A stretch of DNA of 64,000 nt. It comes from Blastocladiella emersonii ATCC 22665. Its lineage: Eukaryota > Fungi > Blastocladiomycota. Made by a program: the position numbers and the translations under genes. Location: NCBI GenBank assembly GCA_025594325.1, contig JANHCV010000009.1:1-64000 (forward strand), read 5' to 3'. Each line of letters starts with the position of its first letter. Position 1 is the first letter of the stretch. Below, piece after piece: positions 31,303 to 45,682 of the stretch. The notes beneath the pieces are model-generated. The model searched no databases. It was given only the letters and a program-made list of their open reading frames with translations, and was not told where the DNA came from.

Positions 31303-34300
31303 ATGAGCTCCTCGTCGTCGTCGCGGCAACGTGGCTCGTCGTCCTCGGCGGCCAGCAGACGCTCGCGCCCGACCACACCGGCCTCGCAGCAGCAGCAGAA
31401 CCAGCTCCCCGAGTCCGCCTTTGCCGAGCGCTGGTCGATGCCCTCGACCAAGACGCGCGCGAGCCCGTCCTCGATTGGCCTCGAGCGCGTCGCCCTGCAG
31501 TCCGCGTCGCCGCGCGCCGCGTCGCGTCACGGACCCGCCGCCGACTCGGGCACCCTGCCCGAGCTCCCGCCCGTCACGGCCAGCCCCGGACAGCACGTCC
31601 GCGGCCGCTCGGCCGGATCCGCTAACATGTCGCCCTCGGGCTCCGAGCACGGCTACGGCTCGCGCACTCCGCGCAGCGCTTCCTCGTCCATGGGCTACTC
31701 GCGCTCGCCTACCCACTCGGCCGGCCCGGCCGGTCCCGCTGCCGGGCTCTCGGCCGCCGGTTCCTACGCGCTGCTCAGGTACGACGGCTGGACACTGCGA
31801 CCACCACCGCATCGTTGATTGACCTCGATCGACCGCCGGTAGCCCCGAGTTCCGCCGCATGCGCATCCGCGAGAAGACGTACGACGTCAACCTCGTCTCC
31901 ACCCACATGCCCACCTACGAGCCCCTGCTCGACGAGTACCTACAGGACTACTTCAACACACCCTCCATCCGCGCCCACCTCGTCAGTCTCGGCATCGTAC
32001 GTTGCTCGCTCCACGCGTCCGTTCATCGTGCCCGAGCGCTGACCGGTTGATCCCACTCCAGATTGACCGCGACGGCTTCATCATTGACGAGCGCACCTTC
32101 AAGTACGCCCAGCTCGCCCTCGACCGCGTCGAGCGCGAGGACCAGATCGCCCGCCTCAACCAGCAGCGCGACATTGACCGCGAGGTCGAGGTCGCCCTGC
32201 GACAGGGCCAGGATCGCGCCCGCTCCGCGTCCCCGCGCAAACTGCGCGGCCATGGCGGCGACATGTGGACCAAGACCACCGAGAACTACGCCCCGACGGC
32301 ATCCTCGCCTACCGCGAACATGTCCTCGTCGTCGTCGCTCGGAGCGGTCCAGCCTGGTGCCCCTGCGTCTCCAGGGCCACCCGCGACTACACCGCCGCCG
32401 CTTCACCAGCGCAGGCAGTCGGCCGCCGCGGCCATCTCGCCGCTGCTCCCCATGACTCTCCCGCCCGTCGCCTCGCCGCCGCGCATCTCGCCCTCGGGCC
32501 TCTCGTCGCGCTACAACCTCCCGCCGCGCGCCACCAACACCACCGTCTCCCGCCCCGGCTCGCGCGCCGGATCGGGCGTCCTGCGCACGCATCCGGGCAC
32601 CTCGAGCAACAGCGCGACCGCGTCGGACCCCAGCATGGCGGCCGCGCTACCCGATACGGCGTCCATCACTGGCGCCACCATGGCCGCGGCGAGCATGAGC
32701 GCCAGCACGCCCGTGTCGCGCGAGCACTCGGCGTCGTCGTCGCCGCGGCCCGTCCACCCGGCGCGCCCCAGGTCGGCCTTCACCAAGGCGCGGCCCATGT
32801 CGCCGCGCGCCACCCACTCGACGCTCGCGCCCGCCGAGAACACGCAGCGCGACCCCGTCGCCGAGTTCTACCGCGAGTACTCGGACGACGACGACTTTGC
32901 GTCCGAGTCGGCCGACCCGCCGTCCGAGCGGTCTGCTGCCTCGGCAAAGTCCCCGCGCACGGCAACGAAGCGCCGGCCCATGTCGCCCACCTCCGAGTCG
33001 GGCGCGCAGGTCGAGCCCGAGGACGTCCCGCCCGCGACCGCCACGACGGGCACGTCGCCCGCGCGGCCCATCACGCTCGAGTCGGCGACGCAGCCGTCGA
33101 CGTCGCACCTCGCCCTGTTCCGCGACGGCGCCACGCAGGTCGACCGCCCCGCCGAGCGCCTCGCCACATCCGCGCAGACCTCGGCCCACACGCTGTACCG
33201 CGACGCGGGCGTCGAGCCGCTGCACACGGCCAAGTTCGAGTCGGGCATGCAGACCAGCGCGCTCGACCTTCGCACCCAGCCGGCGCAGACGGAGCGGCCG
33301 AGCTCGCACGACGTGTCGACTGCCGCCACCACCGCGCGCGCGTCGATCCAGGCGCAGACGAGCGCCGCCGAGGTTGGGCAGCAGCACGCGCAGACTAGTT
33401 CGGCTGAGCTGACTCAGCGCCACGCCCAGACGAGTGTCGCCGAGCTGAGCCAGCGGCACGCCCAGACCAGTGTCACGGAAGTGAACCAGCGGCACGCGCA
33501 GACCAGCAGCGCCGACGTGTCGCACCGACAGGTCCAGTCGTCGGCCCAGGCGCTCGGCGTCCACCATGGTACCTCGGCCATGCAGTTCGGCACCGACTCG
33601 GCCTCGGCCGCCGTCGGGCCCGACGCTGCGTCCGAGACGGGTCTGCCGTTCGATGTCACGGACAACACGAGGTACGCTGTTCGCTGGTCGGCTTTTGGGC
33701 GACGCATGCTGACATTTTCCCTCGCTTAGCTACCGCGCTTTCGAAATCGCCCTGCACGAGGCTACCTCGCTGCTCGACGACGCGCAGCCGGCGACCGCGC
33801 GCGACCGCGCGACGCACCTGGTCCGCGTCATGCAGTCGTCGGCGGGATTCTCGCGGCACCCGGTCCCGCGCGCCATCCTCGCCGAGGCGTACCTCGTGTG
33901 CGCGCGCGCCGCGTACCGCATGGGCGACACACCCGCCGCCGAGTCCGGCATTCTGTCGGCTATGCACTACGCCGTCGACTCGGCCGGCAGCGGCGCCCTG
34001 CTCCGCGACATTGTCGAGTTCCAGCACGTCGTCATGGCCGAGCGTGAGTTCCGCGCGCCGTCTGCGCCGCAACAGCAGCATCAGGCCGCCCAGCAGCCGC
34101 AGCAGCAGCAGGTCCCGCCGCCGCCGCAGATTGACTCGCGTCCGTCGTCGGCCGTGGTCCCCAACGCTGCCTCGCTCACGACCGCCGAGCGTCTCCTCGT
34201 CGGCTACATTGCCGCGCTCGGCGGCGACGTCCGCGAGGCGCTCGACGAGATCCAGCGCACCCGCGCCATGGCCGCTCAGGACTCGGCGCCTGCCGCGAGC

Positions 34301-37300
34301 CAGCACCGCGCGGCGGCACCGGCCCGGCCGAAGAGCGCCGCCAACCTGCTCCGCGACGAAACGACGGTCGTGCAGCAGCAGGAGCCGCAGCAGGAGAAGG
34401 AAGAGGTAGCCGCCTTAGCACCGCCCGCCGCCATCGATGAACAGCCCGCTGCCGAACCTTCTCGTCCCCCGTCGGCGCCGCGGACCCCGCGAAACGCCTC
34501 GCAGCACGCGTCGACCGAGTCGCTCGCGCGCGCCTCCCCGAAACGCCGCACGCTGACCAAGTCGCAGCCGAGCCTTCTCGCCGCGACTGGCAAGTCCGCC
34601 ACCGTCGAGCCCACGCCCGATGCCGCCCCGCTCCGCCGCCCGCGCAGCGACACGATCCGCTACGTGCAACCGGCGTCGAACGCGTCGCCGTACGCGCAGT
34701 ACGTGGTCGCGGCGCCGGCCGACGCCGCCAAGCCCGCGTCGGGCTCGGCCACGCCGTCCCGCACGTCGAAGCCCGCGAGCCGTCGCGCGTCCAAGCCCAG
34801 CAGCGTCGCCGGCTCGTCGGCCGCGCTGACCGCGCCGCGTCCCGCGTCGGCCGGCGCCATCGAGTCAGCGTTTGACGTCAAGGACATTATCCGCCAGGGC
34901 TCCCTCGTCATTGCCGAGGACCCGGCGCCTGCGCCTGCGCCAGCCCCTGCACCCGTCGTTGACTCGACGCTCAACCTCGCGTCGGGCGTCGCGCTCCCCG
35001 ACTCGGCCGCCGTGTCCACCGAGAGCATCCACGAGGACCCGCCACCACCCGCCGAGCAGCCGCACGTAGTCTCGCTCCCGCCCCTCGCTGACGCAGAGCC
35101 TGCCGTGTACGCGGCGCCTGCAGCAGACGCGTCCAAGGAGAGCCTCGAGCAGGCCGACTCGGCGAGCTCCGAATCGGTCCACGCCGCGGCGGCGGTCCCG
35201 CTGCCCGCGTCCGTCGCCGGGTCGCGCGTCCTGTTTGGCTCGACGCACTCGGTCGCTGGCTCGGAGCCTGCCCGCACCGCCGCCGCGCCTGCGAATAAGT
35301 CGCCGCTATCGGGTGCGCCGGTGACGGCAGCGCTCGGTCTCGGGCTCGGGATTGGCGCCCTCGCTGCGTCGGCGCTGTTTCGGAGCAAGGACGAGATCGC
35401 CGGCGTCGATTCCCATCCGGCCGACGCGCACGACGACAGCGTTGATCCTGCCGGCGTCCCGCTTCCGCAGTCGGTTGCGGCCTCGCTCGCGCTGCTCGCA
35501 GGCCCGGTGCCGCAAGCGGACGAGCCTACCCCAGCTGTCGCTGTCGAGGAGAAGCAGGAGCCGCTCGAACCCGTCGAGGCCGCTCCGGTGCCCAAGGAGC
35601 CCGCCGCCCCCCTGGCCCAGGTCGAGGAGGAGCGCTTCGAGCTCAATTCTGCGACGATCGCCCTGCCCGCGAGCGTTGCTGCATCGCGGACGCTGCTCGC
35701 TGAGCCCGAACCCGAACCTGCGCCGGCCGATAACTCGGCCGTCCCGGCTGAGCCTGCTGTCTCGACATCGCAGGACAATCTCGGCGTCGATCCGCACCAC
35801 GTCGTGCTCCCGGCATCCGTCGCCGCGTCCGCCCTGCTGCTAGCATCCAGTGAGCCCATGCTCGCCGAGCAGCAGCCGGACGACGAGCCCGTGCGCGAAC
35901 CCGCCTCGAAGCCCGACCACGCTGGCGCCGACGACCCGCGCTCGATTGCGCTGCCGGCCTCGGTTGCTGCCTCCGCGCTCCTGCTCGCGTCTACGGCGAG
36001 TCTGCACGACTCGGAGCGCCACGCCGAGCAGCGGTTGCAGGTGGACGTGAGCGACCCGCACTCGATTGCGCTCCCCGCGTCCGTAGCCGCCTCCGCGCTC
36101 CTCCTCGCCGCCTCGACCCAGAGCCTCGCCAGGGCGCCGAGCCAGCCCACGGTCCAGCCGACGGCGGAACCTGCGTCCGTGGCCGAGGACTCGCTCGTTG
36201 ACCCGCACTCGCTCACGCTTCCCGCCTCCGTCGCTGCCTCGGCGATGCTCCTCGCTTCTTCGTATGAGCTCGCCGAGGAACCGAGGCAGACTCCGGTCCA
36301 TGCCTCGGCGCAGCTCGAGGAAGAGTCGGTGGACCCGTCCTCGGTCGCCCTGCCTGCGTCCGTAGCCGCATCGGCCCTCCTTCTCGCCGCGTCGACGCAG
36401 AATCTGGCCAAGGCGCCGAGCCAACCGTCGGTCCGCGATGCTGCCTCGCCGCAAGACCAGACGGAGCAGTTGTCGGTCGATCCGCACTCTATCGCGCTCC
36501 CGGCCAGCGTCGCGGCCTCCCAAACGCTGTTTGCCGCCGAGCCCGCTCGGGAGCCCGCTCGTGAGCCACTTCGCGACGCGCCATCGGTTTCCGCGTCGAG
36601 CACGCACCTCGCCGCGGATCCTCACTCGATCGCCCTCCCAGCTTCCGTCGCCGGGTCGGCGATGCTGTTGGCGTCGACGCAGGACCTCGCACGGGCGCCA
36701 AGCCAGCCCTCCGTCAGCGACGCGACCGCGCTCGAGCAGTCGGTCGACCCGCACTCGATTGCGCTTCCGGCGAGTGTCGCTGCCTCGCAGACGCTGCTCA
36801 ACGAGGCGACCGCGCCCGCGCTCGCGGCTTCGGCTTCACCGTCCTCCGCCAACCTCGCAAGCGACCCACACTCGATTGCGCTACCCGCTTCAGTCGCCGC
36901 GTCGGCGCTCCTCCTCGCGTCCACGCAGGACCTGCAGCCGGCGCCGAGTCAGCAGCAGCTCGAGCAGGAGGAGGACGAGTCGGCCGACCCGCACTACGTC
37001 GCCCTTCCCGCGAGCGTAGCGGCGTCGCAGGCGCTGTTCGCCGGGCCTTCTCATGAACCCCTCCGCGAGACGCCGTCGGCCTCGGCCTCTCGGACCGATC
37101 TCGCCGCCGATCCCCACTCGATTGCTCTTCCCGCGTCGGTGGCCGCATCCGCGATGCTGCTCGCATCGGCCCAGGACCTCTCCGAGCCGCCTCACCACGC
37201 GCCTCTCCATGACACAGAGCGGAGCGAGCACGAGGACGAGTCAGCCGACCCGCACTCGATCGCGCTGCCGGCGAGCGTTGCCGCGTCGCAGGCCCTCTTC

Positions 37301-40300
37301 ACCGAGCCAGCCTCGGTCACGGAGCGCGATGCGTCGGTCCATGCGTCCAGCAGCGACGTATCGGCGGACCCGCACTCGATCGCACTTCCCGCCTCGGTTG
37401 CCGCCTCTGCGCTCCTTCTCGCGTCCAACCAGAGTCTCAGCGGCAAGGCCGTGAGCCAGTCGCAGCTGACCGCCGAGCCCGCAGCACCTGTCGCTGCCGA
37501 AGTCGACCCCCGCTCGATTGCGCTTCCGGCGTCGGTGGCGGCCTCGCAGACGCTCTTCTCCGATTCGAGCGCCGCTGCCGAGCCTGCCGGCCGACTCGAG
37601 GACCAGCAACCCGACCCGCTCTCGATTGCCCTTCCCGCGTCGGTTGCGGCCTCGGCGCTCCTGCTCGCGTCGGCACAGGACCTGCGCGAGCCGCCAGCCG
37701 CGTCGGTCGTCCGCGAGAATGTCGCCCCGCAGGAACCCGTCGATGCGGACCCGCACGCGATTGCGCTCCCGCCGAGCGTCGCGGCGTCGCAGACGCTGTT
37801 CGCCCCGCTCGCCGAGGAGTCCCGCCCTGCTCTCGCGCCATCAACCGCAACGGCCGCGTCGCGCGAGGAGCTCGACCTCGACCCGCGCTCGATTGCCCTC
37901 CCCACCTCTACCGCTGCGTCGGCACTGCTTCTCGCCTCGCGCGACGCGCTGACGGAACCCGCTGCTGAACCGGCCCTCGCACAGCGCCCCGTCGACCCGC
38001 ACGGCATCGCGCTCCCGGCATCCGTCGCCAGCTCGGCGCTGCTGTTGGCGGCATCTCGCAGTTTTGACGCAGTTGACGCCGCTGACGACGATCCCGGTGT
38101 CCGCGACGACGATGTCGACCCGCACTCGATTGCACTTCCGGGTTCCGTGGCCGCATCACTGGCCCTGCTCGGATCTGCGCGGCAGCTCACGTCCGACGAC
38201 CGCGCCGCCGCGCCGTCCGCGCAAGAAGAGCAGGGCGACCTCGTCGACCCGGCGTCTATCTCGCTCCCGGCATCCGTCGCCGGCTCCGCGCTCCTTCTCG
38301 CATCGCGGCACGACCTCGCCGATCCTGCCTCGATCGCGCTCCCGGCCTCGGTCGCCGCGTCGGCTCTGCTCCTCAACGAGCCTGACCCGATTGACGACGG
38401 CGCCGTTCGTGTCGAGGTTGACCCTGCGTCCATCCACCTGCCCGCGTCGGTCGCATCATCGGCGCTGCTGCTCGCTGCTTCGTCCCGCGACCAGCTGTCT
38501 GCGCAGGCTGACCCGGCCAGCGTTCCGCTACCTGCGTCGGTCGCCGCGTCATTGGCGCTCCTGTCCGAGCCGTCCGTCCAAACCGACTCTTCCTCAAACA
38601 CAAGCGAGCCAGCTCCGCCATCTGCCGATCCACACGCTGTTCTGCTTCCCGAGTCGGTCGCCGCATCGCAGGCCCTGTTTTCCTCGCGCGACGCGCTCGC
38701 CCAGGGTTTCTCGAGTCCGAGGGCCGCCTCGCAGGACGCGCTCGCTGCGGACCCGGCTACGATCGCGCTACCCGCGTCCGTCGCCGCGTCCATGATGCTG
38801 TTCGGTTCACGCGAGACGCTGAAGCCGCGCGAGCCCCTGGACCACGTCGATCCGCACGCCGTGTCGCTGCCCGCGTCGGTCGCGGCCTCGCAGGCGCTCT
38901 TCGCGTCCGGCGACCGTCTCGCTCAACCAACGACTCCGCCGGAACAGGTCGCCGACCATTTCGATCCTACGTTCGTCGCTCTCCCCGACTCGGTCGCTGC
39001 CTCGCAGGTTCTCTTCGCGCCCGCACCGGCGCCGGCGAGTTACGTGGCCGACGCGGCTCTCGCACCCGCGTCAGTTCCGCTCCCCGCGTCCGTCGCCGCG
39101 TCCATGGCGCTTCTCTCGTCCACGACGGCGCTCGATGCGGCGCAGCCCAACCCCGAGCCCGTCAAGCCTCACGACGACGCTGTGGATCCTGCTGCGTACG
39201 CGCTACCCGCGTCGCTTCCAGGTTCCGCGTCCATTCTCGCGGACGGTCCGGGCACCGAACCTCTCGCTGAAGCTCTCGACCCGGCCAGCGTCGCGCTCCC
39301 TGCGTCGGTGGCCGGCTCGCGCATGCTTCTCGCTTCGTCGCTCGCCCTCGACTCGACTCCGCCTGGAAGTAGCGGCCGACTCGCCAGTACGACCGCGCTC
39401 GATGCTGCGTCGATTGCGCTCCCAGCCTCGGTCGCCGGCTCGATTGCTCTTCTTTCGCAGCAGCCCGACCTCGCCGCATCGCAGCGCGCGCTGTCGGGCA
39501 AGTCGAGCGACCGTGATGTCGACCCGGCCGGAATCGCGTTTCCCGCATCGGTCGCCGGCTCGACTGTGCTCCTCGCGTCGGGCACCAACCTCGCCCGCAT
39601 CGCGTCCGTATCGGGCTCGCGCTCGATTCTCCACCACGCAGCACTCGATGCGGCGACGTACCCGCTTCCTGCCTCGGTCGCTGGGAGCCAGGCGCTGTTC
39701 GGGTCCCAGGTCACGCTGGAGCCAGCGGATCGGGCGTCTGTCGCCCATAGCCACACAGCCGATCCGGCCGCCATTGCGCTACCGGCCTCAGTCGCCGCCT
39801 CGACCGCTGCGCTCACGCCCGAGCTGCGCGAGGTGGACCAGGTCGATCCTGCCATGGTCGGCCTGCCGCCGTCTGTCGCCGGCTCGCAGGTTCTCGCCCA
39901 ATCGATGACGCAGCTGTCTCGGCCAGAGTCTACGCCAGTGCTTCGCCAGAATTCCGCGTCGACGCCCGCTCTGAACAGATCCTCGTCCGTCACACAGGTC
40001 GACCCATCCCAGATTGCACTTCCAGCGTCTGTTGCGGGATCGACCGCGTCCGTCGCTCCTCGCTCAGAGCAGCAGGACCCCGCGAGTATCGACCCTGCCT
40101 CCATCGCGCTCCCGGGCTCCGTCGCGTCCTCGAATCAGTCGCTCGCGCGGACGGCATCGCTTCCCGCTGTCGGCCCTACCCCGGTCCACCAGCACCATGG
40201 CCGCCACGGCACGTCCCCGCTTCGGCAGCAGGTCGACCTCGCTGCGACGTCGAGCGAGGAGCTCGTTGCCGCCGACCCGACCGACGTGCCGCTTCCCGCC

Positions 40301-43300
40301 TCGGTCGCCGGATCGCGCGTCCTGCTCAGTTCGACGCCCAACCTCGCTCAACCCCGCGTCGCTCAGCAGCCGCAACCGCAGGCCGTTCACGGCTCGCATC
40401 GCATGCTGGCCAAGTCGCAGCCCCATACTCGCAGCATGGGTTCCATTCCCGGGAAGTCGGCCACCGATCCCGCGTCGGTTCCGCTGCCTGCGTCCACGGC
40501 GGGCTCTCGCTCGGCCGTCGCCTCGAACGCTTCGATTACCCGCGGCCCCGCAGCGGCACAGCCACTCGACCCCGCAGCCATCGCTCTTCCCGAGTCGCGG
40601 GCGGCGTCGGTGCAGGTTCTCGCGGGCAAGGCCGCTGGATCAGCGCCGGGCTCCGCGCGAGCGTCCGCGTCCAACCTGCGCGATCGCTCCGAAATCGATC
40701 CCGCCTCGGTCGCGCTTCCCGCCTCGGTTGCTGGGTCGCAGGCGCTGTTCGGCGACGCAGCTCCCGCCGATGTCGCCGGTATCCAGCGGTCCGCTTCGCA
40801 GGGGAGCCTTCGCCGCGCCGACCGTTCCATCGAGCAGTACCCCCACACGAACACCGAGGTCGACGCGGCCAGCTACCCACTGCCCCGCTCGCTCGCAGGG
40901 TCGCGGGTTTTGCTCCACTCGCACTCGTCGCTCCCGTCGGTTAACGAGGAGCCCGAACCCGACCCGACCTCGTTTGCGCAAACCGAGTCCGTAACGGGCT
41001 CGCGCGTCCTGTTCTCCTCGCAGCAGAACCTCGCGTCCGCTCGCCATTCGCGGCCGACTAGCGCCACGAGTTCGAGCCGCGCGCTGGCCCACTTTGAGGT
41101 CGACCCCGCCATGTACGAGCTCCCGGCGTCGCTCGGCGGCTCGGCGCTGCTCCTCGCCGGTTCGCACCACGTTCTCGCACCGGTCAGCGAGACGAGCGAG
41201 TCGACTGGAAGCCAGGGTGAGTCCGACCAGCCGGATCCGTCCGAGTTCCCGCTGCCCGCATCGGTTGTCGCGTCGCACATGCTTCTCGCTGGATCGCAGG
41301 CGAGCCTCCGCGACGGACGCGCGAGCAACGAGCGGGTCGCTGACCCCGCCAGTATTGCGCTTCCGCCGTCCGCTGCGGCGTCGCAGATGCTCTTCTCGTC
41401 CAGCCCTGCCCTCGCGGGGTCGTCGACCGCTGTCAACCACGGCACGTCTGCGAGAACCGCAAGTGATGCTCTCGAACCGACATCGGTCCCGCTCCCTGCC
41501 TCGGTCGCTGCGTCGCAGAACCTGCTCACGTCTACCGCCTCGCTGAGCGAGCCGCTCGCCCATCACGACGCGACCGAGTCGACGACCGCCGGCGCCACCC
41601 GCGAAGCAGAGCCAGTCGCCGAATTTGGCCGTCTCGACGCCGCGCTCGTACCGCTCCCTGCATCCGTGGCGGCGTCGCGCAACCTCCTGGCTTCCACGCC
41701 GGCTCTCGATCAATTTCCTACGCAGCAGGCCATGGACGCCGACCCAACCTCGGTCCCGCTCCCCGCGTCCGTCGCCGCGTCCCAGAACCTCTTCACGGAG
41801 CCGGCCGATTCCGCAGACATGTTTGCGCCCGAGCCTGTTCCATTGCGTCCGAAGCGCTTGCCGGTCGAGCAGCACCAGCGGCCAGAAGCTACGACGCCCG
41901 TTTTCGATCCAGTGTACCCGTCGCTCGTCCCGCTTTCTGCCTCGGTCGCCGCGTCGCGCAACCTGCTGGCATCCACGGCAGCACTCGAGGAGCCGCTCGC
42001 GACGGTTCAGGTCATCAATGCGACCAACGAGGACCCGTCGCAGGTTCCGCTACCCGAGTCAGTTGCCGCCTCGCGGCTTCTCCTCGCCTCGAACTCGAAC
42101 CTCGGCGAGCGAGTCTCGGCGTCGACCGTCGGAATCGATGCGGCTCAGCTTCCCCTCCCTGCATCAGTCGCCGCGTCGCGCAACCTGCTCTCGTCGACAA
42201 CGGCGCTCGATGCTCATGCGCAGGACGAAGACAACGCCGCCTCGCGTATACCGCTTCCGGCCTCGGTCGCGGCATCGCAAAACCTGCTCGCGTCGGTAAC
42301 CGCGCTCAACGTGCAGCCTGAACCGCGTGCGCTTAAGACGGACGATCCCGCTGTCTCTACTGCCGCGGTGAACCCCGTCTACCCGTCGCTCGTCCCACTT
42401 CCGCCATCGGTTGCCGCGTCGCGCCACTTGCTCGCCTCCATGGACGCACTCGACTCGTCGTCCGCGGTCGACGCAGCGCACCCCGCCCTCGTCCCGCTTC
42501 CGGCCTCGACCGCCATGTCGCAGGACTTGCCGGCCTCGACCCGAGTACTCGACGCGGCGGCGCAGCAGGAGCACACATCTGCGCCCGAAGTCGAGCCGGC
42601 CGAGTTCCGCGAGGAGCAGTTTACTGCCGATCCGGCGATGGTCCCGCTTCCGCACTCGGTCGCCGGCTCTCGAGCGCTTCTTTCGTCGGAACAGCAACTC
42701 GATGTGCGGCCGCACGAGCACCTCGAGACGGGTTCCGCTCGTGCTAGCACGGATGCGCTCGACGCAGCCGCCATCGCGCTCCCGGCGTCCGTGGCCGCGT
42801 CCGCCTTCCTCCTTTCGGAATCGCCTCAAGCTCCTGTCGACGCACCGCAGCTCGCCGATGCCTCTGCTGATCTCGACGCTGAGCCCGCAACAGTGCACCG
42901 TGCGGCGAGCGGGAACGTGTACCCGTCGCTCGTTCCGCTTCCCGCCTCTGTCGCGAGCTCCCAGGTCCTTCTCGCGTCGCGAACTAACCTCGCGGCGAGC
43001 CAGATGCTTCGGCCGCAGCAACTTGCTGCCGAGCCCGAGCCGCTGCAGGAACCGGAGCTCGACCCGTCGTCGATTGCCCTCCCTCGCTCCGTTGCGGCCT
43101 CGGCTGCGCTGCTGAGTTCATCCACCGAGCTGGACTCGAGCGCTCTCGTGCGGACGGTCGCGCAGCGCGAGCACCTCGAGCAGCCCGAGACGCCCGAGAC
43201 GCCCGCGACCGCTCCGACGGCGGACTCGCCAACGGCCGCGCACGACCCGCGTCCTGCTTCCGCGGCGTCATCCCGCTCCAACTCGACGCTTCGGCTGGCC

Positions 43301-45682
43301 CTCTCGACGCGGTTGCCCGACTCGGTCGCCAGCTCCATGTCTCGACTGGCATCCGCAGCCAACCTCGCAACGTCGACCCTCTCGCGCAAGCTGTCCGGGT
43401 CAGCCCGCTCGCTCCGCAGCTCGCGCTCGAACTCGACGTCCCAGGTCCGCGCGTCGAACTCGGCCCTCGCAGCCGTGGACCCTGCTTCGATTGCGCTCCC
43501 GCTCTCGGGTGCAGCATCGCAGGAACTCGCGGGCAAAACGCTCGAGTCGCGGTCTGCTTCCGTTCCAGCTCTCGCTGAACCGGCTTCCAGCCGTGCGCCC
43601 GCTGGGCTCGCGAAGAGCATGGACACGCTCGGCGCGGCGCAGTTCGACCTTCCCGAGTCGGTCGCTGGTTCGGCCATGCTGCTGAGCCAGCCCAATCTCA
43701 CGGTTTCGGGTGCGGCCGTGGCGAACCAGCGCGCGGCCAGTCACGATGCTTCGCTCGCTGCCGCCGTGGCAGCTCCTTTGCCTGGATCGGTCGCGGCCTC
43801 GGCGCTCCTTCTCGCAGATGACGACGCGCTGCCCGCTCAACCACACGAGGAATCGACCGCCTCGTCGTCGGAGACCACGCCCGCCCCACCAACCGAGTCG
43901 GCTACCAGCGGAAGAAGCGCGTCCGTCGAGTTTGACCCAGCGACGATTGCGCTCCCGCTCTCAGTTCCTGGTTCCGCGAGTCTGCTGCGCGAGAGCACCA
44001 GTGCAACGGCACCGCCGTCAGTAGCCCACGCCACCGACGCGCCTACGCTTCCCGAACCGACGCTCCTGTCCGAGATCAACCTCGCCCTCGACCCGCAGCC
44101 TGTTGCCCTCCCCGCGTCCGTCGCCGGCTCGAGAGCTCTTCTCGCCGGCTCCGAGCCCCAGCTCGCCGAGCCGTCGCAGCAACGCGTGTCCGAATCGTCT
44201 ACCAATCTCGTGGTGCGCACTCTTACGCTTGCCCACGTTACAAGATCTCGCTGAACCCGCCCTCCGCCTCGTTTGTAGCATCAGCCCGATCCTGCGTCGA
44301 TTGCCCTCCCCGAGTCGGTCGCCAGCTCGCGCACCTCGGTCGCACCCGAGGCCGCCCCGACGAGCGCGGGGGCCGACCCCGACGCGTCCATCAACAGTAC
44401 CGACATGCGCAGCTTGCTCGACCAGCTCCCGTCCGTGGCTGGCTCACGGATGTCGCTCAAGTCGCACGGGCCCGTGGATCCCGCGTCGCTTCCGCTCCCC
44501 GCGTCCAACGCGGCCTCGCTCGACGCGCTGGGCCCCGATTCCGAGTACTTTGTTGCGCGCCGTCCCGACTCGGCCGGCTCGCAGTCGTCGGGTGACGCGC
44601 TGATCACCAGCGCGGATACGGGCCGCGTTCTGGCGATGCTTCCGTCATCCATCATGAGCCTTAACCATGGCGCGGCCGTGTCGCGGAGCGAACCGTCGCT
44701 CGACGCGGCGTCGTTCCCGCTTCCCGCGTCGGTCGCAGCGTCGCAGGTGCTCACGTCGCGCTCGGCTTCCCGTATGCTGCTCACCACGGAAAAGAGCAGT
44801 GCGATTGCTCCTCCTGCCGCGCCGGCACCACACGACGTGCACGCCTCGCTCCCGAACCTGACGGCGGCTCCCGCAACCACGACCGAGGACTCGAGCGCGC
44901 TCGCGCCGCGTGCCTCGAGCGGCGAGGAGGTCAAACCGACGCCACCAACGACGGAACGTCGGCACTCGGCGTCCGCGAGCGGCAGCTCGCCGCAGCGTGC
45001 GTCGCGGCCGGCTTCGAGCAAGTCGCGCGGTTCGGCACGGTCGGTGGCTCCCGCCGCGGCGGTGCCGTTCCTCAAGGAGACGCTTGACCAGTGGGGCATC
45101 GAGCTCGGCCCGTCGATCACGCACCTGGCGACGCTCGACGATACGGCGTCACGCCAGTCGACGGAGCCGTCCCGCGCCGCGTCCGTCCATTCCCTGGCCC
45201 ACCACGGCTCGCAGCCGGAGCTCTCAGCGACGGGACCTGCTCCCGTTTCCGCACCCACGCCTCCCGCAGCGGCTCCCTCTAGCACCGAGCAGCGCGGGTC
45301 GCGGTCCAACCTGCTCCAGCAGCGCGCGGCGAGCCAGTCCCAGCTCAAGAAGAGCGGCGGCGGGTCCATCAGCGGCGGCGGCAATTACGTCGCCGCCTCG
45401 GGGTCCACTGCAACAGCTGCGGGGATCCGCAACAAGGCGATCAACGCGGCCATCGCGGCGGCGGTGACCTCGTCGCGAGCGGCATCCAGCGGGTCGCTCC
45501 TCCCCAAGCACGACGCGCAGACGACGCCCAAGGTCGAGCCACCAGCACCGGTGCTCCCCAAGTCCGAGAGCCAGCCGATCGCAGCGCAAGAGCCAGGAGC
45601 GCCCCTCCTCGGCGCCGGTACAGCGGGCCCGTACCCGAAGGAGCTCTCCGGGTCGTTCATCACGGAGCACATTGCGCAATAA
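31303..45682 (+). CDS. Giant repeat protein, ~4708 aa, join(31303..31778,31843..31996,32062..33671,33730..44212,44279..45682)
   Basis: Four phase-compatible GT-AG introns (64, 65, 58 and 66 nt) link ORFs 31171, 31859, 32002, 33830 and 44405 into one frame of 14127 nt. It contains an ERICH3-like N-terminal motif, 12-aa HAQTS repeats, a short helical TPR-like patch and ~70 DPxSIALPASVAASxxLL repeats. Confidence 0.88.
35195..44755 (+). repeat. Coding repeat array: ~70 copies of an ~18-aa motif DPxS[IV][AP]LP[AES]SVA[AG]SxxL[LF] with variable linkers
   Basis: Hand count from the translation gives 68 copies in exon 4 and 3 in exon 5, including a few degenerate ones. Confidence 0.92.

What the first reader, a model, noticed from the sequence alone, without database searches (positions are those of the whole stretch)
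31303..45682. Giant ~4,700-aa protein built from ~70 copies of an unrecognised DPxSIALPASVAASxxLL motif
Seen: five exons splice into one 14127-nt frame. About two-thirds of the protein is an acidic, P/A/S-rich disordered-looking chain punctuated by ~70 conserved 18-aa motifs (Asp-Pro cap, IALP/VPLP, a short hydrophobic helix SVAASALLL) with variable linkers. I do not recognise the motif as any named repeat family. Inference: a multivalent scaffold, tether or molecular ruler. With the ERICH3-like head and QT repeats, it is a candidate structural component of the zoospore flagellar apparatus (rootlet, basal body or nuclear-cap tether).
Basis: partly seen in the sequence, partly recalled or inferred. 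Interest (0 to 1): 0.85.

Follow-up and report, generated by a model that had tools for sequence, protein, structure and literature searches.

The report
Giant motif-array protein with ERICH3-like head
A real 4,708-residue gene of a blastoclad (zoospore-forming) fungus joins a head domain shared with the animal cilium protein ERICH3 to about 70 copies of an undescribed short peptide motif; it is the largest member found here of an uncharacterised protein family of flagellated fungi, and its function is still unknown.

Summary
Five exons (31303-45682, + strand) give one 14,127-nt frame of 4,708 aa. All four introns are 58-66 nt, GT..AG, and each carries an in-frame stop. The protein holds 70 copies of v-D-P-x-S-[IV]-[AP]-L-P-A-S-V-A-[AG]-S-x-x-L-[LF], against about 2 expected by chance. 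Synonymous sites between copies are fully randomised, so selection keeps the motif, not recent duplication.

There is no Pfam or PDB match. AlphaFold2 models the array as disordered, with a short low-confidence helix after each Leu-Pro.

The gene is not an orphan. Long orthologues with 27-48 motif copies occur in Sorochytrium, Catenaria, Blastocladiella britannica and Allomyces. Short paralogues carry about 6 copies. Chytrid relatives (Batrachochytrium, Quaeritorhiza, Geranomyces) carry a diverged core, LPxSxxxS. All share a roughly 100-aa head that matches the N-terminus of animal ERICH3 by sequence profile and by predicted fold. The named head-bearing proteins come almost entirely from flagellated lineages.

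My best reading is inference: a disordered multivalent docking scaffold anchored at a ciliary or basal-body structure, possibly paired by LC8 at a conserved QT-motif cluster. I could not obtain expression, localisation or a binding partner.

The scan's earlier notes on this gene are on this same window, not on other DNA.

The parts
31303..31778 (+). Exon 1. The ATG lies in a GCCACC-ATG context. It encodes a Ser/Arg-rich N-terminal region (aa 1-158).
   Evidence: Sequence read. tblastn shows conservation with the Catenaria orthologue's N-terminus. Frame check.
31843..31996 (+). Exon 2, the first half of the ERICH3-like head (...EKTYDVNLV...YEPLLDEYLQDYFNTPSIRAHL..LGI).
   Evidence: An unspliced relative, P0011, has an intron at the same position.
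32062..33671 (+). Exon 3. It holds the second half of the head (to about 32215), an S/P-rich region, and the QT cluster.
31844..32215 (+). ERICH3-type head domain (aa ~160-262), interrupted by intron 2 (31997-32061).
   Evidence: The head profile found 144 hits among 1.84 billion representative proteins. hhalign to the fish ERICH3 N-terminus gave 96%. The AF2 model has pLDDT 86.9. Foldseek to human and mouse ERICH3 residues 1-96 gave probability 1.00.
33172..33507 (+). Cluster of seven [AM]-Q-T-S motifs (aa 581-692). The last five are spaced 12 aa apart. They are candidate LC8-type sites.
   Evidence: TRF finds a period-36 repeat at 33385-33506. Clusters sit at the same place in B. britannica, Catenaria and Allomyces, and Allomyces has canonical TQT.
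33730..44212 (+). Exon 4 (10,483 nt). It holds the conserved helical middle region, a hydrophobic stretch and most of the motif array.
33791..34291 (+). Conserved helical middle region, TPR-like by language-model features only. It includes the ...ERLLVGYIAALGGDV... motif shared with the chytrid relatives.
   Evidence: tblastn to Catenaria, Sorochytrium and B. britannica. The Atlas features are a weak lead.
35321..35393 (+). Gly/Ala-rich hydrophobic 20-mer (aa 1278-1300) that looks like a transmembrane segment.
   Evidence: Kyte-Doolittle mean of 1.86 over 19 aa. An equivalent stretch occurs in Catenaria, B. britannica, Allomyces and the short paralogues. It is absent from Sorochytrium and the chytrids.
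34976..44758 (+). Array of 70 copies of D-P-x-S-[IV]-[AP]-L-P-A-S-V-A-[AG]-S-x-x-L-[LF] (aa 1169-4400). It crosses intron 4 (44213-44278).
   Evidence: alignment A3. Synonymous codon identity is 0.414 observed against 0.403 expected.
36332..37940 (+). Sub-block of 11 units that strictly alternate between ..S-A-[LM]-L-L.. and ..S-Q-[TA]-L-[FL].. types, a two-unit super-repeat.
   Evidence: Unit types and lag-2 nucleotide identity of 0.68 against 0.65 at lag 1.
44279..45682 (+). Exon 5. It holds the last three or four motif copies, then a 308-aa S/A/P-rich tail and the stop codon.
   Evidence: The frame resumes directly in a motif copy (...DPASIALPESVASS...). The motif copies match the orthologues.

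Best explanation
This is one real protein-coding gene of a blastoclad fungus. The organism is probably a Blastocladiella, because the window's GC of 69% equals that of a B. emersonii ATCC 22665 locus. The gene encodes a 4,708-aa, mostly disordered protein that belongs to an uncharacterised family found across zoospore-forming fungi. The family's architecture has five parts. First is an N-terminal ~100-aa helical head homologous to the N-terminus of the animal cilium protein ERICH3, with a weaker link to SPMAP1-like sperm microtubule proteins. Second is a Ser/Pro-rich linker. Third, in the long blastoclad forms, is a cluster of QT motifs of the type that binds dynein light chain LC8. Fourth is a short helical middle region. 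Fifth is an array of a linear motif whose invariant core is L-P-x-S-x-x-x-S. Shown here are the gene structure, the motif array and selection on it, the family and the head homology. The rest is inferred. I propose that the head fixes the protein to a microtubule-based ciliary or basal-body structure of the zoospore. LC8 may pair two chains at the QT cluster. The acidic array would then act as a flexible multivalent docking platform that binds many copies of one conserved, still unknown partner through an extended peptide. The two invariant serines spaced four apart may make that binding phosphorylation-dependent.
For: Gene model. Motif array: 70 copies against about 2 by chance. Motif columns carry 2-3 bits and linkers 0.5 bits or less. 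The two core Ser are invariant in 70/70 copies; the first uses both TCN and AGY codons (6 AGY), the second uses AGY once. Codon identity between copies equals random expectation, 0.414 against 0.403. TRF sees no DNA-level tandem repeat in the array. These results point to long-term purifying selection on the peptide. Orthologues: a motif HMM built from the window finds 27-48 copies in Sorochytrium, Catenaria, B. britannica and three Allomyces proteins (E 1e-94 to 1e-123). It finds 6 copies in each of three short paralogues and none in shuffled controls. Chytrid head-bearing proteins are enriched 20- to 60-fold for LPxSxxxS in the same register. Head. Distribution: of the 33 hits with a name or Pfam assignment, the named hits were zoosporic fungi, vertebrates, the flagellate Cantina and an unclassified eukaryote (TZLM1-RC), with no Dikarya or Mucoromycota among them. 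ERICH3 localises to primary cilia, affects cilium length, and the same paper cites a proteomics study that found it abundant in isolated human airway motile cilia (PMC6848114). Disorder: AF2 gave pLDDT 36 with a helix after each LP. QT cluster conserved in position.
Against: There is no expression, localisation or interaction data for this gene or for any orthologue. No RNA run holds this DNA. Metatranscriptome reads gave only 40-50-nt scraps. No paper mentions any orthologue locus tag. The family lacks ERICH3's DUF4590 domain and Glu-rich tail, so ciliary function is transferred through the head alone, and the role of that head is itself unknown. The head profile weakly hits Hyaloraphidium (E 9e-5), which by my own knowledge lacks flagella. 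Only about 30 of the 144 hits could be named. The blastoclad and chytrid motif versions are too short and too diverged for a significant profile match: hhalign gave E 0.17 and the HMM found at most 3 weak copies in Geranomyces. The QT motifs have Ala or Met where canonical LC8 sites have Thr.
Confidence: 0.45

Rival explanations
1. Self-associating 'stickers and spacers' matrix. The Ala/Ser/Leu-rich motif helices, with their small-xxx-small S-V-A-A-S face, would stick to one another across chains, and the acidic linkers would act as spacers. This would build a gel or condensate-like material, such as a pericentriolar or rootlet matrix, rather than docking a separate partner.
For: There are seventy weakly hydrophobic short helices in an acidic disordered chain. 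A two-unit alternation of motif subtypes could favour pairing. A possible LC8 pairing site lies upstream.
Against: Chytrid versions carry Pro inside the would-be helix and lack the Leu-Leu pair. The family-wide conserved element is therefore an extended L-P-x-S-x-x-x-S peptide, which is typical of binding to a folded partner. The AF2 helices have pLDDT below 55.
Confidence: 0.2
2. Membrane-linked tether. The Gly/Ala-rich hydrophobic 20-mer would be a transmembrane or membrane-embedded anchor. The array would then lie along or across a membrane (flagellar, nuclear-cap or side-body), linking it to the cytoskeleton through the head.
For: The hydrophobic stretch scores in the transmembrane range (KD 1.9-2.5) and is conserved just before or within the array in both blastoclad paralogue lineages. 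ERICH3's ciliary localisation depends on the membrane-associated ARL13B and BBSome (PMC6848114). ERICH3 has also been linked to vesicles (PMC8141066).
Against: There is no signal peptide. Motif copies lie on both sides of the stretch, in the window and in Allomyces. The stretch is absent from Sorochytrium and from all chytrid relatives. It is Gly/Ala-rich and of only marginal hydrophobicity.
Confidence: 0.1
3. A non-ciliary role, for example in vesicle traffic or another cytoplasmic scaffold. The head would be a general protein-interaction module, and the flagellate-biased distribution would be coincidental.
For: Human ERICH3 has also been reported to associate with vesicle and clathrin machinery (PMC8141066). 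The head hits Hyaloraphidium, which by my own knowledge lacks flagella. Only a fifth of the head hits could be named.
Against: All strong named hits (E < 1e-20) are from zoosporic fungi. The head also links to SPMAP1-like proteins that pass Pfam's threshold, P0096 and P0126. No Dikarya or Mucoromycota proteins were seen among the named hits.
Confidence: 0.15
4. Functionless low-complexity expansion, or an annotation artefact of a 70% GC genome in which long ORFs arise easily.
For: Many long antisense ORFs overlap the region. There is no RNA evidence.
Against: The whole architecture is conserved in five other genera. The motif is under strong positional constraint with saturated synonymous sites. 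Introns are needed to keep the frame open.
Confidence: 0.03

Closest known systems
ERICH3 (glutamate-rich protein 3, C1orf173) of animals
   Same: They share the N-terminal ~95-aa head, with the conserved core Y-x-x-L-x-D-x-x-L-x-x-Y-F-x-x-x-x-x-R-x-H-L-x-x-x-G-[LI]-I-x-x-x-G-x-I. Evidence is the profile E of 1e-12, hhalign at 96% and Foldseek probability of 1.00 to residues 1-96. Both are large, mostly disordered, acidic proteins. ERICH3 is a cilium protein (PMC6848114).
   Different: The window protein has no DUF4590 domain and no Glu-rich tail. ERICH3 has no LPxSxxxS array. The window protein is three times longer.
Uncharacterised 'hypothetical proteins' of zoosporic fungi, e.g. Catenaria BCR44DRAFT_1482032, Allomyces AMAG_16691, Sorochytrium RI367_000270, B. 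emersonii H9P43_006233, Spizellomyces SPPG_07052 and the Batrachochytrium proteins
   Same: They share the same head, the same helical middle region with the ..LGGD.. motif, and the same motif array. These are the true orthologues and paralogues.
   Different: The window protein has the most copies seen, 70 against 6-48, and the most regular consensus. The chytrid versions keep only the L-P-x-S-x-x-x-S core, often continued as S-R-x-x-S. None of these proteins has been studied.
SPMAP1-like proteins (PF15075; described by Pfam as sperm microtubule associated protein 1)
   Same: The central part of the head profile significantly hits multi-repeat proteins that pass the PF15075 threshold. Seven of 37 heads give sub-threshold PF15075 matches.
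   Different: The orthologue's head scores 16.5 bits against the 27-bit cut-off, and the window's own pieces gave no match at E <= 1. The structural match is weak, with E about 1-3.
Multi-site LC8 hub partners (ASCIZ and Nup159 type; recalled from my own knowledge)
   Same: Both have a tandem cluster of short Q-T-containing motifs inside a disordered region. Here there are seven, the last five spaced 12 aa apart and preceded by a basic residue at -2.
   Different: The first anchor residue is Ala or Met, not Thr. Binding was not tested. This cluster is only a small part of the protein.
Disordered tandem binding-repeat proteins (tau/MAP repeats, Sfi1 centrin-binding repeats, bacterial FnBPA-type repeats)
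   Same: The general design is the same: many short conserved peptides separated by flexible linkers, each expected to bind one copy of a partner.
   Different: There is no sequence relation. Pfam gave no hit. The array has no Trp, which Sfi1 repeats require. The Atlas likeness to Fn-binding repeats scores only 0.65.

Membership tests
ERICH3 (animal glutamate-rich protein 3) | N-terminal ~95-aa head domain | tested here: met
   The head profile hit a DUF4590-bearing fish ERICH3 at residues 3-59 with E 1.1e-12. hhalign gave 96%. The AF2 head model against AFDB gave probability 1.00 to human and mouse ERICH3 residues 1-96 at 29% identity. The model was built on the Catenaria orthologue's head.
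ERICH3 (animal glutamate-rich protein 3) | DUF4590 domain (PF15257) | tested here: not met
   No hit at E <= 1 in any window exon, in the blastoclad orthologues or in the chytrid relatives. The same library finds the domain at E 7e-96 in the fish protein.
ERICH3 (animal glutamate-rich protein 3) | Glutamate-rich C-terminal half | tested here: not met
   The array is 4.9% Glu and is dominated by Ala, Ser, Leu and Pro.
SPMAP1-like (PF15075) | Score above Pfam's gathering threshold (27 bits) | tested here: not met
   The Sorochytrium head scored 16.5 bits, E 0.011. The window pieces gave no hit.
Unnamed zoosporic-fungal family (ERICH3-type head plus LPxSxxxS array) | Head, helical middle region and repeated L-P-x-S-x-x-x-S motif in one protein | tested here: met
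   tblastn shows collinearity with three orthologues. The motif HMM finds 27-48 copies in the orthologues. The head tree places the window with the long blastoclad forms.
LC8 (dynein light chain) multi-site partners | Several TQT-type anchor motifs in a disordered region | tested here: inconclusive
   There are seven [AM]-Q-T-S motifs. Their position is conserved in the orthologues, and Allomyces has true TQT. The first anchor residue is non-canonical here.
LC8 (dynein light chain) multi-site partners | Physical binding of LC8 dimers | not testable with these tools
   No complex prediction or experiment was available.
Single-pass membrane proteins | One hydrophobic helix of about 20 residues with a consistent topology | tested here: inconclusive
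   The Gly/Ala-rich 20-mer has a KD mean of 1.86 and is conserved in blastoclads. However, motif copies lie on both sides of it, there is no signal peptide, and it is absent from the chytrids and Sorochytrium.
Sfi1-type centrin-binding repeats | Conserved Trp in each repeat (from my own knowledge) | tested here: not met
   There is no Trp between aa 1160 and 4400.
Any named Pfam repeat or domain family | Significant Pfam-A match to the motif or array | tested here: not met
   There was no family at E <= 1 apart from one chance LrgA match at E 0.13. The PDB profile search found nothing at E <= 10.

The most novel reading that the evidence does not exclude
The L-P-x-S-x-x-x-S array would be a periodic docking ladder for one conserved component of the zoospore flagellar apparatus, such as tubulin lattice sites, a kinetosome or rootlet protein, or an IFT/BBSome-linked factor. 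The ERICH3-type head would anchor it, LC8 would pair it, and phosphorylation of the two invariant serines would switch binding. Copy number, from 6 to 70 across species and paralogues, would then set the reach or capacity of the structure. This would define a new class of ciliary linear motif. It would also assign a first function to the ERICH3 N-terminal domain.
Probability: 0.2. Interest if true: 0.8.

Novelty: new variant of a known kind. Interest (0 to 1): 0.55.

Why it matters
The ERICH3 N-terminal head turns out to be an ancient, separable module. It is shared by animals, zoosporic fungi and some flagellate protists, and in fungi it is attached to a very different tail. The tail's motif is kept by selection in 70 copies within one protein and in relatives from two fungal phyla, so a conserved binding partner should exist and should be findable by peptide pull-down. 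Genetically tractable chytrids carry orthologues: Spizellomyces has one with the head but no clear array, and Batrachochytrium has 7-18 perfect repeats. That makes the question testable. It could shed light both on zoospore flagellar architecture and on the poorly understood human cilium protein ERICH3.

Tried and rejected
- **Pfam scans.** Scans of all exons and orthologues gave nothing for the array.
- **PDB sequence searches.** Searches with the head as a single sequence, the 37-sequence head profile and the 70-unit motif profile gave nothing significant.
- **Foldseek against PDB.** The head model gave nothing below E 1. The bovine sperm doublet chains 8otz_O and 8otz_N appear only at E 2-5.
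- **ESM Atlas.** The array scored 0.76 at best, which is uninformative. The head and the middle region gave only weak cilia-like and TPR-like leads.
- **Word-index protein searches.** Queries with a 421-aa and a 1,200-aa array fragment, meant to find shorter motif-bearing proteins, returned no hit. Sensitivity was clearly limited, because the known 1,285-aa paralogue was also missed.
- **RNA evidence.** No served RNA run holds this DNA. Laying four soil metatranscriptomes at 80% likeness gave only 40-50-nt GC-rich scraps and no credible junctions.
- **Exact look-up of a neighbouring ORF.** This was meant to name the organism, but the protein is not on record. The DNA runs that hold the window are listed only under a coded organism name.
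- **Literature by orthologue locus tags.** No paper was found.
- **Tandem Repeats Finder.** It found no DNA-level tandem repeat in the array, so recent expansion or gene conversion is rejected.
- **Motif resemblances rejected by inspection** (patterns recalled from my own knowledge; no tool run): EB1-binding SxIP, calcineurin LxVP and PxIxIT, AP-2 DPF/DPW, the ciliary targeting motif VxPx, AKAP amphipathic helices and Sfi1 repeats. None fits the invariant positions.
- **Secreted mucin or adhesin.** Rejected because there is no signal peptide and the head is of an intracellular type.

Full report

Yes. The + strand between 31303 and 45682 holds four long ORFs in compatible frames. I read the junctions directly. 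The exons are 31303-31778, 31843-31996, 32062-33671, 33730-44212 and 44279-45682.

The introns are 64, 65, 58 and 66 nt long and all are GT..AG. Three have GTACG donors, and all have CTGAC-like branch sites. Each contains an in-frame stop if read through, and three of them shift the frame. Splicing is therefore required for a continuous reading frame. The ATG lies in a GCCACC-ATG context, with in-frame stops upstream. The donor of intron 4 could also lie 3 nt upstream, which changes one codon.

No RNA evidence could be had. No served RNA run holds this DNA. Four soil metatranscriptomes laid at 80% likeness gave only 40-50-nt scraps.

Support for a single gene comes from collinearity with orthologues. 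The Catenaria, Sorochytrium and B. britannica proteins align across exons 1-4 in order. An unspliced relative, P0011, shows an intron at the same place as intron 2. Exon 5 opens directly inside a further motif copy.

**2. The repeat**

A regular expression finds 70 copies between aa 1169 and 4400, which is window 34976-44758. The consensus is v-D-P-x-S-[IV]-[AP]-L-P-A-S-V-A-[AG]-S-x-x-L-[LF]-A-S-x-x-x-L.

- Both core Ser are present in 70/70 copies, and Leu and Pro each in 69/70. Asp is present in 57 copies.
- Motif columns carry 2-3 bits each, while linker columns carry 0.5 bits or less.
- The core LPxSxxxS occurs 70 times, against a mean of 2.3 and a maximum of 9 in 1,000 shuffles.
- Linkers have a median of 23 aa and range from 5 to 92.
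- The array is 21% Ala, 15% Ser, 11% Leu and 11% Pro. Its net charge is about -197, and it has no Trp or Cys.

Several results show that the copies are old and held by selection.

- Tandem Repeats Finder sees no DNA-level repeat in the array.
- Invariant residues use many different codons. The first core Ser uses both TCN and AGY codons (6 of 70 AGY); the second uses AGY once.
- The chance that two copies use the same codon for the same residue is 0.414. The expectation from codon usage outside the motifs is 0.403.

Selection on the peptide, not recent duplication or gene conversion, therefore keeps the motif.

A central block of 11 units strictly alternates two subtypes, and even-lag units there are slightly more alike. 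This fits an old two-unit duplication.

AlphaFold2 on a 421-aa piece gives a mean pLDDT of 36, with a short helix starting right after each Leu-Pro. The chain is disordered, and the helices are predicted with low confidence.

**3. Is the motif known?**

It matches no named family.

- Pfam gave nothing for any exon or orthologue.
- A PDB search with the 70-unit profile found nothing at E <= 10.
- The ESM Atlas had no meaningful neighbour, with a best score of 0.76.

**4. Relatives**

A search with the array found six long proteins, all from Blastocladiomycota. They come from Sorochytrium, Catenaria, Blastocladiella britannica and three Allomyces species. Reading them shows the same head, linker, middle region and motif array.

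An HMM built only from the window's 70 units finds 27-48 copies in these proteins, with E from 1e-94 to 1e-123. It finds 6 copies in each of three shorter proteins (B. emersonii KAI9175869 and two from A. macrogynus). It finds none in shuffled controls.

A head tree places the window with the long forms. The short forms make their own well-supported clade (99/99), which points to a duplication inside Blastocladiomycota.

The organism is probably a Blastocladiella. The window has 69.1% GC, and the B. emersonii ATCC 22665 locus of the short paralogue has 69.7%. The DNA runs that hold the window date from 2021-2022. This identification is not proven, and the giant protein itself was not found in the protein collection.

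**5. The head**

I built a 108-column profile of the blastoclad heads and ran it against 1.84 billion representative proteins. It gave 144 hits, 60 of them below 1e-10. I could name about 30 of them or assign them by Pfam.

- All the strong hits are from zoosporic fungi: Spizellomyces, Geranomyces, Batrachochytrium, Quaeritorhiza, Entophlyctis, Blyttiomyces, Chytriomyces, Nowakowskiella, Siphonaria and Gonapodya.
- The weaker hits include a fish ERICH3 (it carries DUF4590 at E 7e-96, and the head matches its residues 3-59 at E 1e-12).
- They also include vertebrate SPMAP1-like repeat proteins, the flagellate Cantina, an unclassified eukaryote, and Hyaloraphidium at E 9e-5. From my own knowledge, Hyaloraphidium lacks flagella.
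- No Dikarya or Mucoromycota were seen among the named hits.

hhalign of the head profile against the fish ERICH3 N-terminus gives 96% probability. It gives none against that protein's DUF4590 region.

An AlphaFold2 model of the head, built from a 37-sequence alignment, has pLDDT 86.9. Against AFDB Swiss-Prot it finds residues 1-96 of mouse and human ERICH3 as the two top hits. Probability is 1.00, E is 3e-4 and 9e-4, and identity is 29%. SPMAP1 follows only at E of about 1. PDB gives nothing significant.

The fungal proteins lack DUF4590 and the Glu-rich tail, however, so they share a module with ERICH3 rather than being ERICH3 orthologues.

ERICH3 localises to primary cilia and affects cilium length and retrograde-IFT-linked proteins. 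[quoted passage not shown] It has also been linked to vesicles (PMC8141066).

**6. The motif is older than the blastoclads**

Among head-bearing chytrid proteins, several are enriched 20- to 60-fold for LPxSxxxS in the same register.

- Quaeritorhiza has 16 copies, of the form ..A..T-P-L-P-A-S-x-P-x-S-R-x-x-S-A-R.
- Geranomyces has 10 copies, of the form D-R-A-A-x-x-P-L-P-x-S-V-A-P-S.
- Batrachochytrium has 7 to 18 perfect 39-aa tandem units, depending on the isolate.
- Nowakowskiella and one unnamed protein (P0031) have a few copies.

These versions put Pro inside the blastoclad 'helix' and lack the Leu-Leu pair. What is conserved across phyla is therefore an extended peptide: a hydrophobic residue and an Asp or Glu a few residues upstream, then L-P-x-S-x-x-x-S. 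In chytrids a third Ser often follows four residues on, preceded by Arg at -3. That gives an S-x-x-x-S-x-x-x-S ladder with a basophilic-kinase-type last site. This reading is an inference from known kinase consensus patterns.

The cross-phylum link rests on this enrichment and on the shared protein architecture. By profile alone it is not significant: hhalign gives E 0.17, and the window HMM sees only weak copies in Geranomyces.

**7. Other parts of the protein**

- A cluster of seven [AM]-Q-T-S motifs lies between the head and the middle region. The last five are spaced 12 aa apart (33172-33507). Similar clusters sit at the same place in B. britannica, Catenaria and Allomyces, and Allomyces has canonical T-Q-T. 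This resembles multi-site LC8 partners, but binding is untested.
- A helical middle region with a ..LGGD.. motif is conserved into the chytrids.
- A Gly/Ala-rich hydrophobic 20-mer (35321-35393) is conserved in most blastoclad members. Motif copies lie on both sides of it, and it is missing from the chytrids and Sorochytrium. I therefore treat a membrane anchor as a minority reading.

**8. How it most likely works**

Shown here are the gene, the array and the selection on it, the family, and the head homology. The mechanism below is inferred.

The head would attach the protein to a microtubule-based ciliary or basal-body structure. LC8 may pair two chains at the QT cluster. The long acidic chain would then display up to 70 identical docking peptides for one conserved partner, and the two invariant serines may control binding through phosphorylation.

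A strict ruler is unlikely, because linker lengths and copy numbers vary widely. The rivals are a self-associating sticker-spacer matrix, a membrane tether, a non-ciliary scaffold, and a functionless expansion. The last is effectively excluded by the conservation. I put the docking-scaffold reading at about 0.45.

**9. Novelty**

The orthologues exist in public databases only as hypothetical proteins, and no paper mentions them. The motif is undescribed, and the head is an unannotated module of ERICH3.

The general design, short motifs strung on a disordered chain, is a known kind. The combination, the scale and the motif are new. I rate it a new variant of a known kind, with moderate interest, limited by the complete lack of functional data.

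The scan's earlier notes that touch this gene (ERICH3-like motif, AQTS repeats, dimer periodicity) are all on this same window.

Noticed in passing
P0025, P0148 and P0149 (Batrachochytrium dendrobatidis orthologues): The Bd orthologue carries perfect 39-aa tandem units (..SLDKAKNTALPESAPISRVSSAHNEL..). Two isolates differ by exactly 11 units, 1,394 aa against 1,823 aa. This is either real copy-number polymorphism between strains or assembly collapse. It could serve as a strain marker.
   Followed up: partly
window aa 3482, 3637 and 3817 (about 41933, 42398 and 42938); also P0008: A minority variant of the motif replaces D-P-x-S by Y-P-S-L (..V-Y-P-S-L-V-P-L-P..). The same variant occurs in the short B. 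emersonii paralogue. By pattern it resembles the YPxL motif that ALIX/PalA-type proteins bind. This was not tested.
   Followed up: no
window 35321-35393: A Gly/Ala-rich hydrophobic 20-mer with GxGxGxG spacing is conserved in most blastoclad family members, but motif copies flank it on both sides. Whether it is a membrane segment or a self-association element is unresolved.
   Followed up: partly
window 34660-36603 (-), 37192-38793 (-), 40640-41875 (-) and others: Many antisense ORFs of 300-650 aa overlap the gene. In a 70% GC region with strong GC3 (0.82 on the sense strand) these are expected by composition and should not be taken as genes.
   Followed up: no
window 34065-34129: An imperfect 27-nt repeat encodes a poly-Gln/Pro stretch in the middle region (TRF). 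Soil metatranscriptome scraps pile up here, which shows that it attracts non-specific GC-rich matches.
   Followed up: no
L001 (B. emersonii JANHCV010000007.1, 863558-873650): The short paralogue (KAI9175869, 1,285 aa) ends exactly in a motif copy (..VPLPESRSASRLLL-stop). So does the A. macrogynus short paralogue, two residues before its stop. The long forms instead have a 300-aa tail after the last copy.
   Followed up: no
P0051 (Scleropages formosus, partial): This fish ERICH3-like model contains the head plus DUF4590 unit twice (heads at about 3-56 and 581-640; DUF4590 twice). It is either a tandem duplication or a fused gene model.
   Followed up: no
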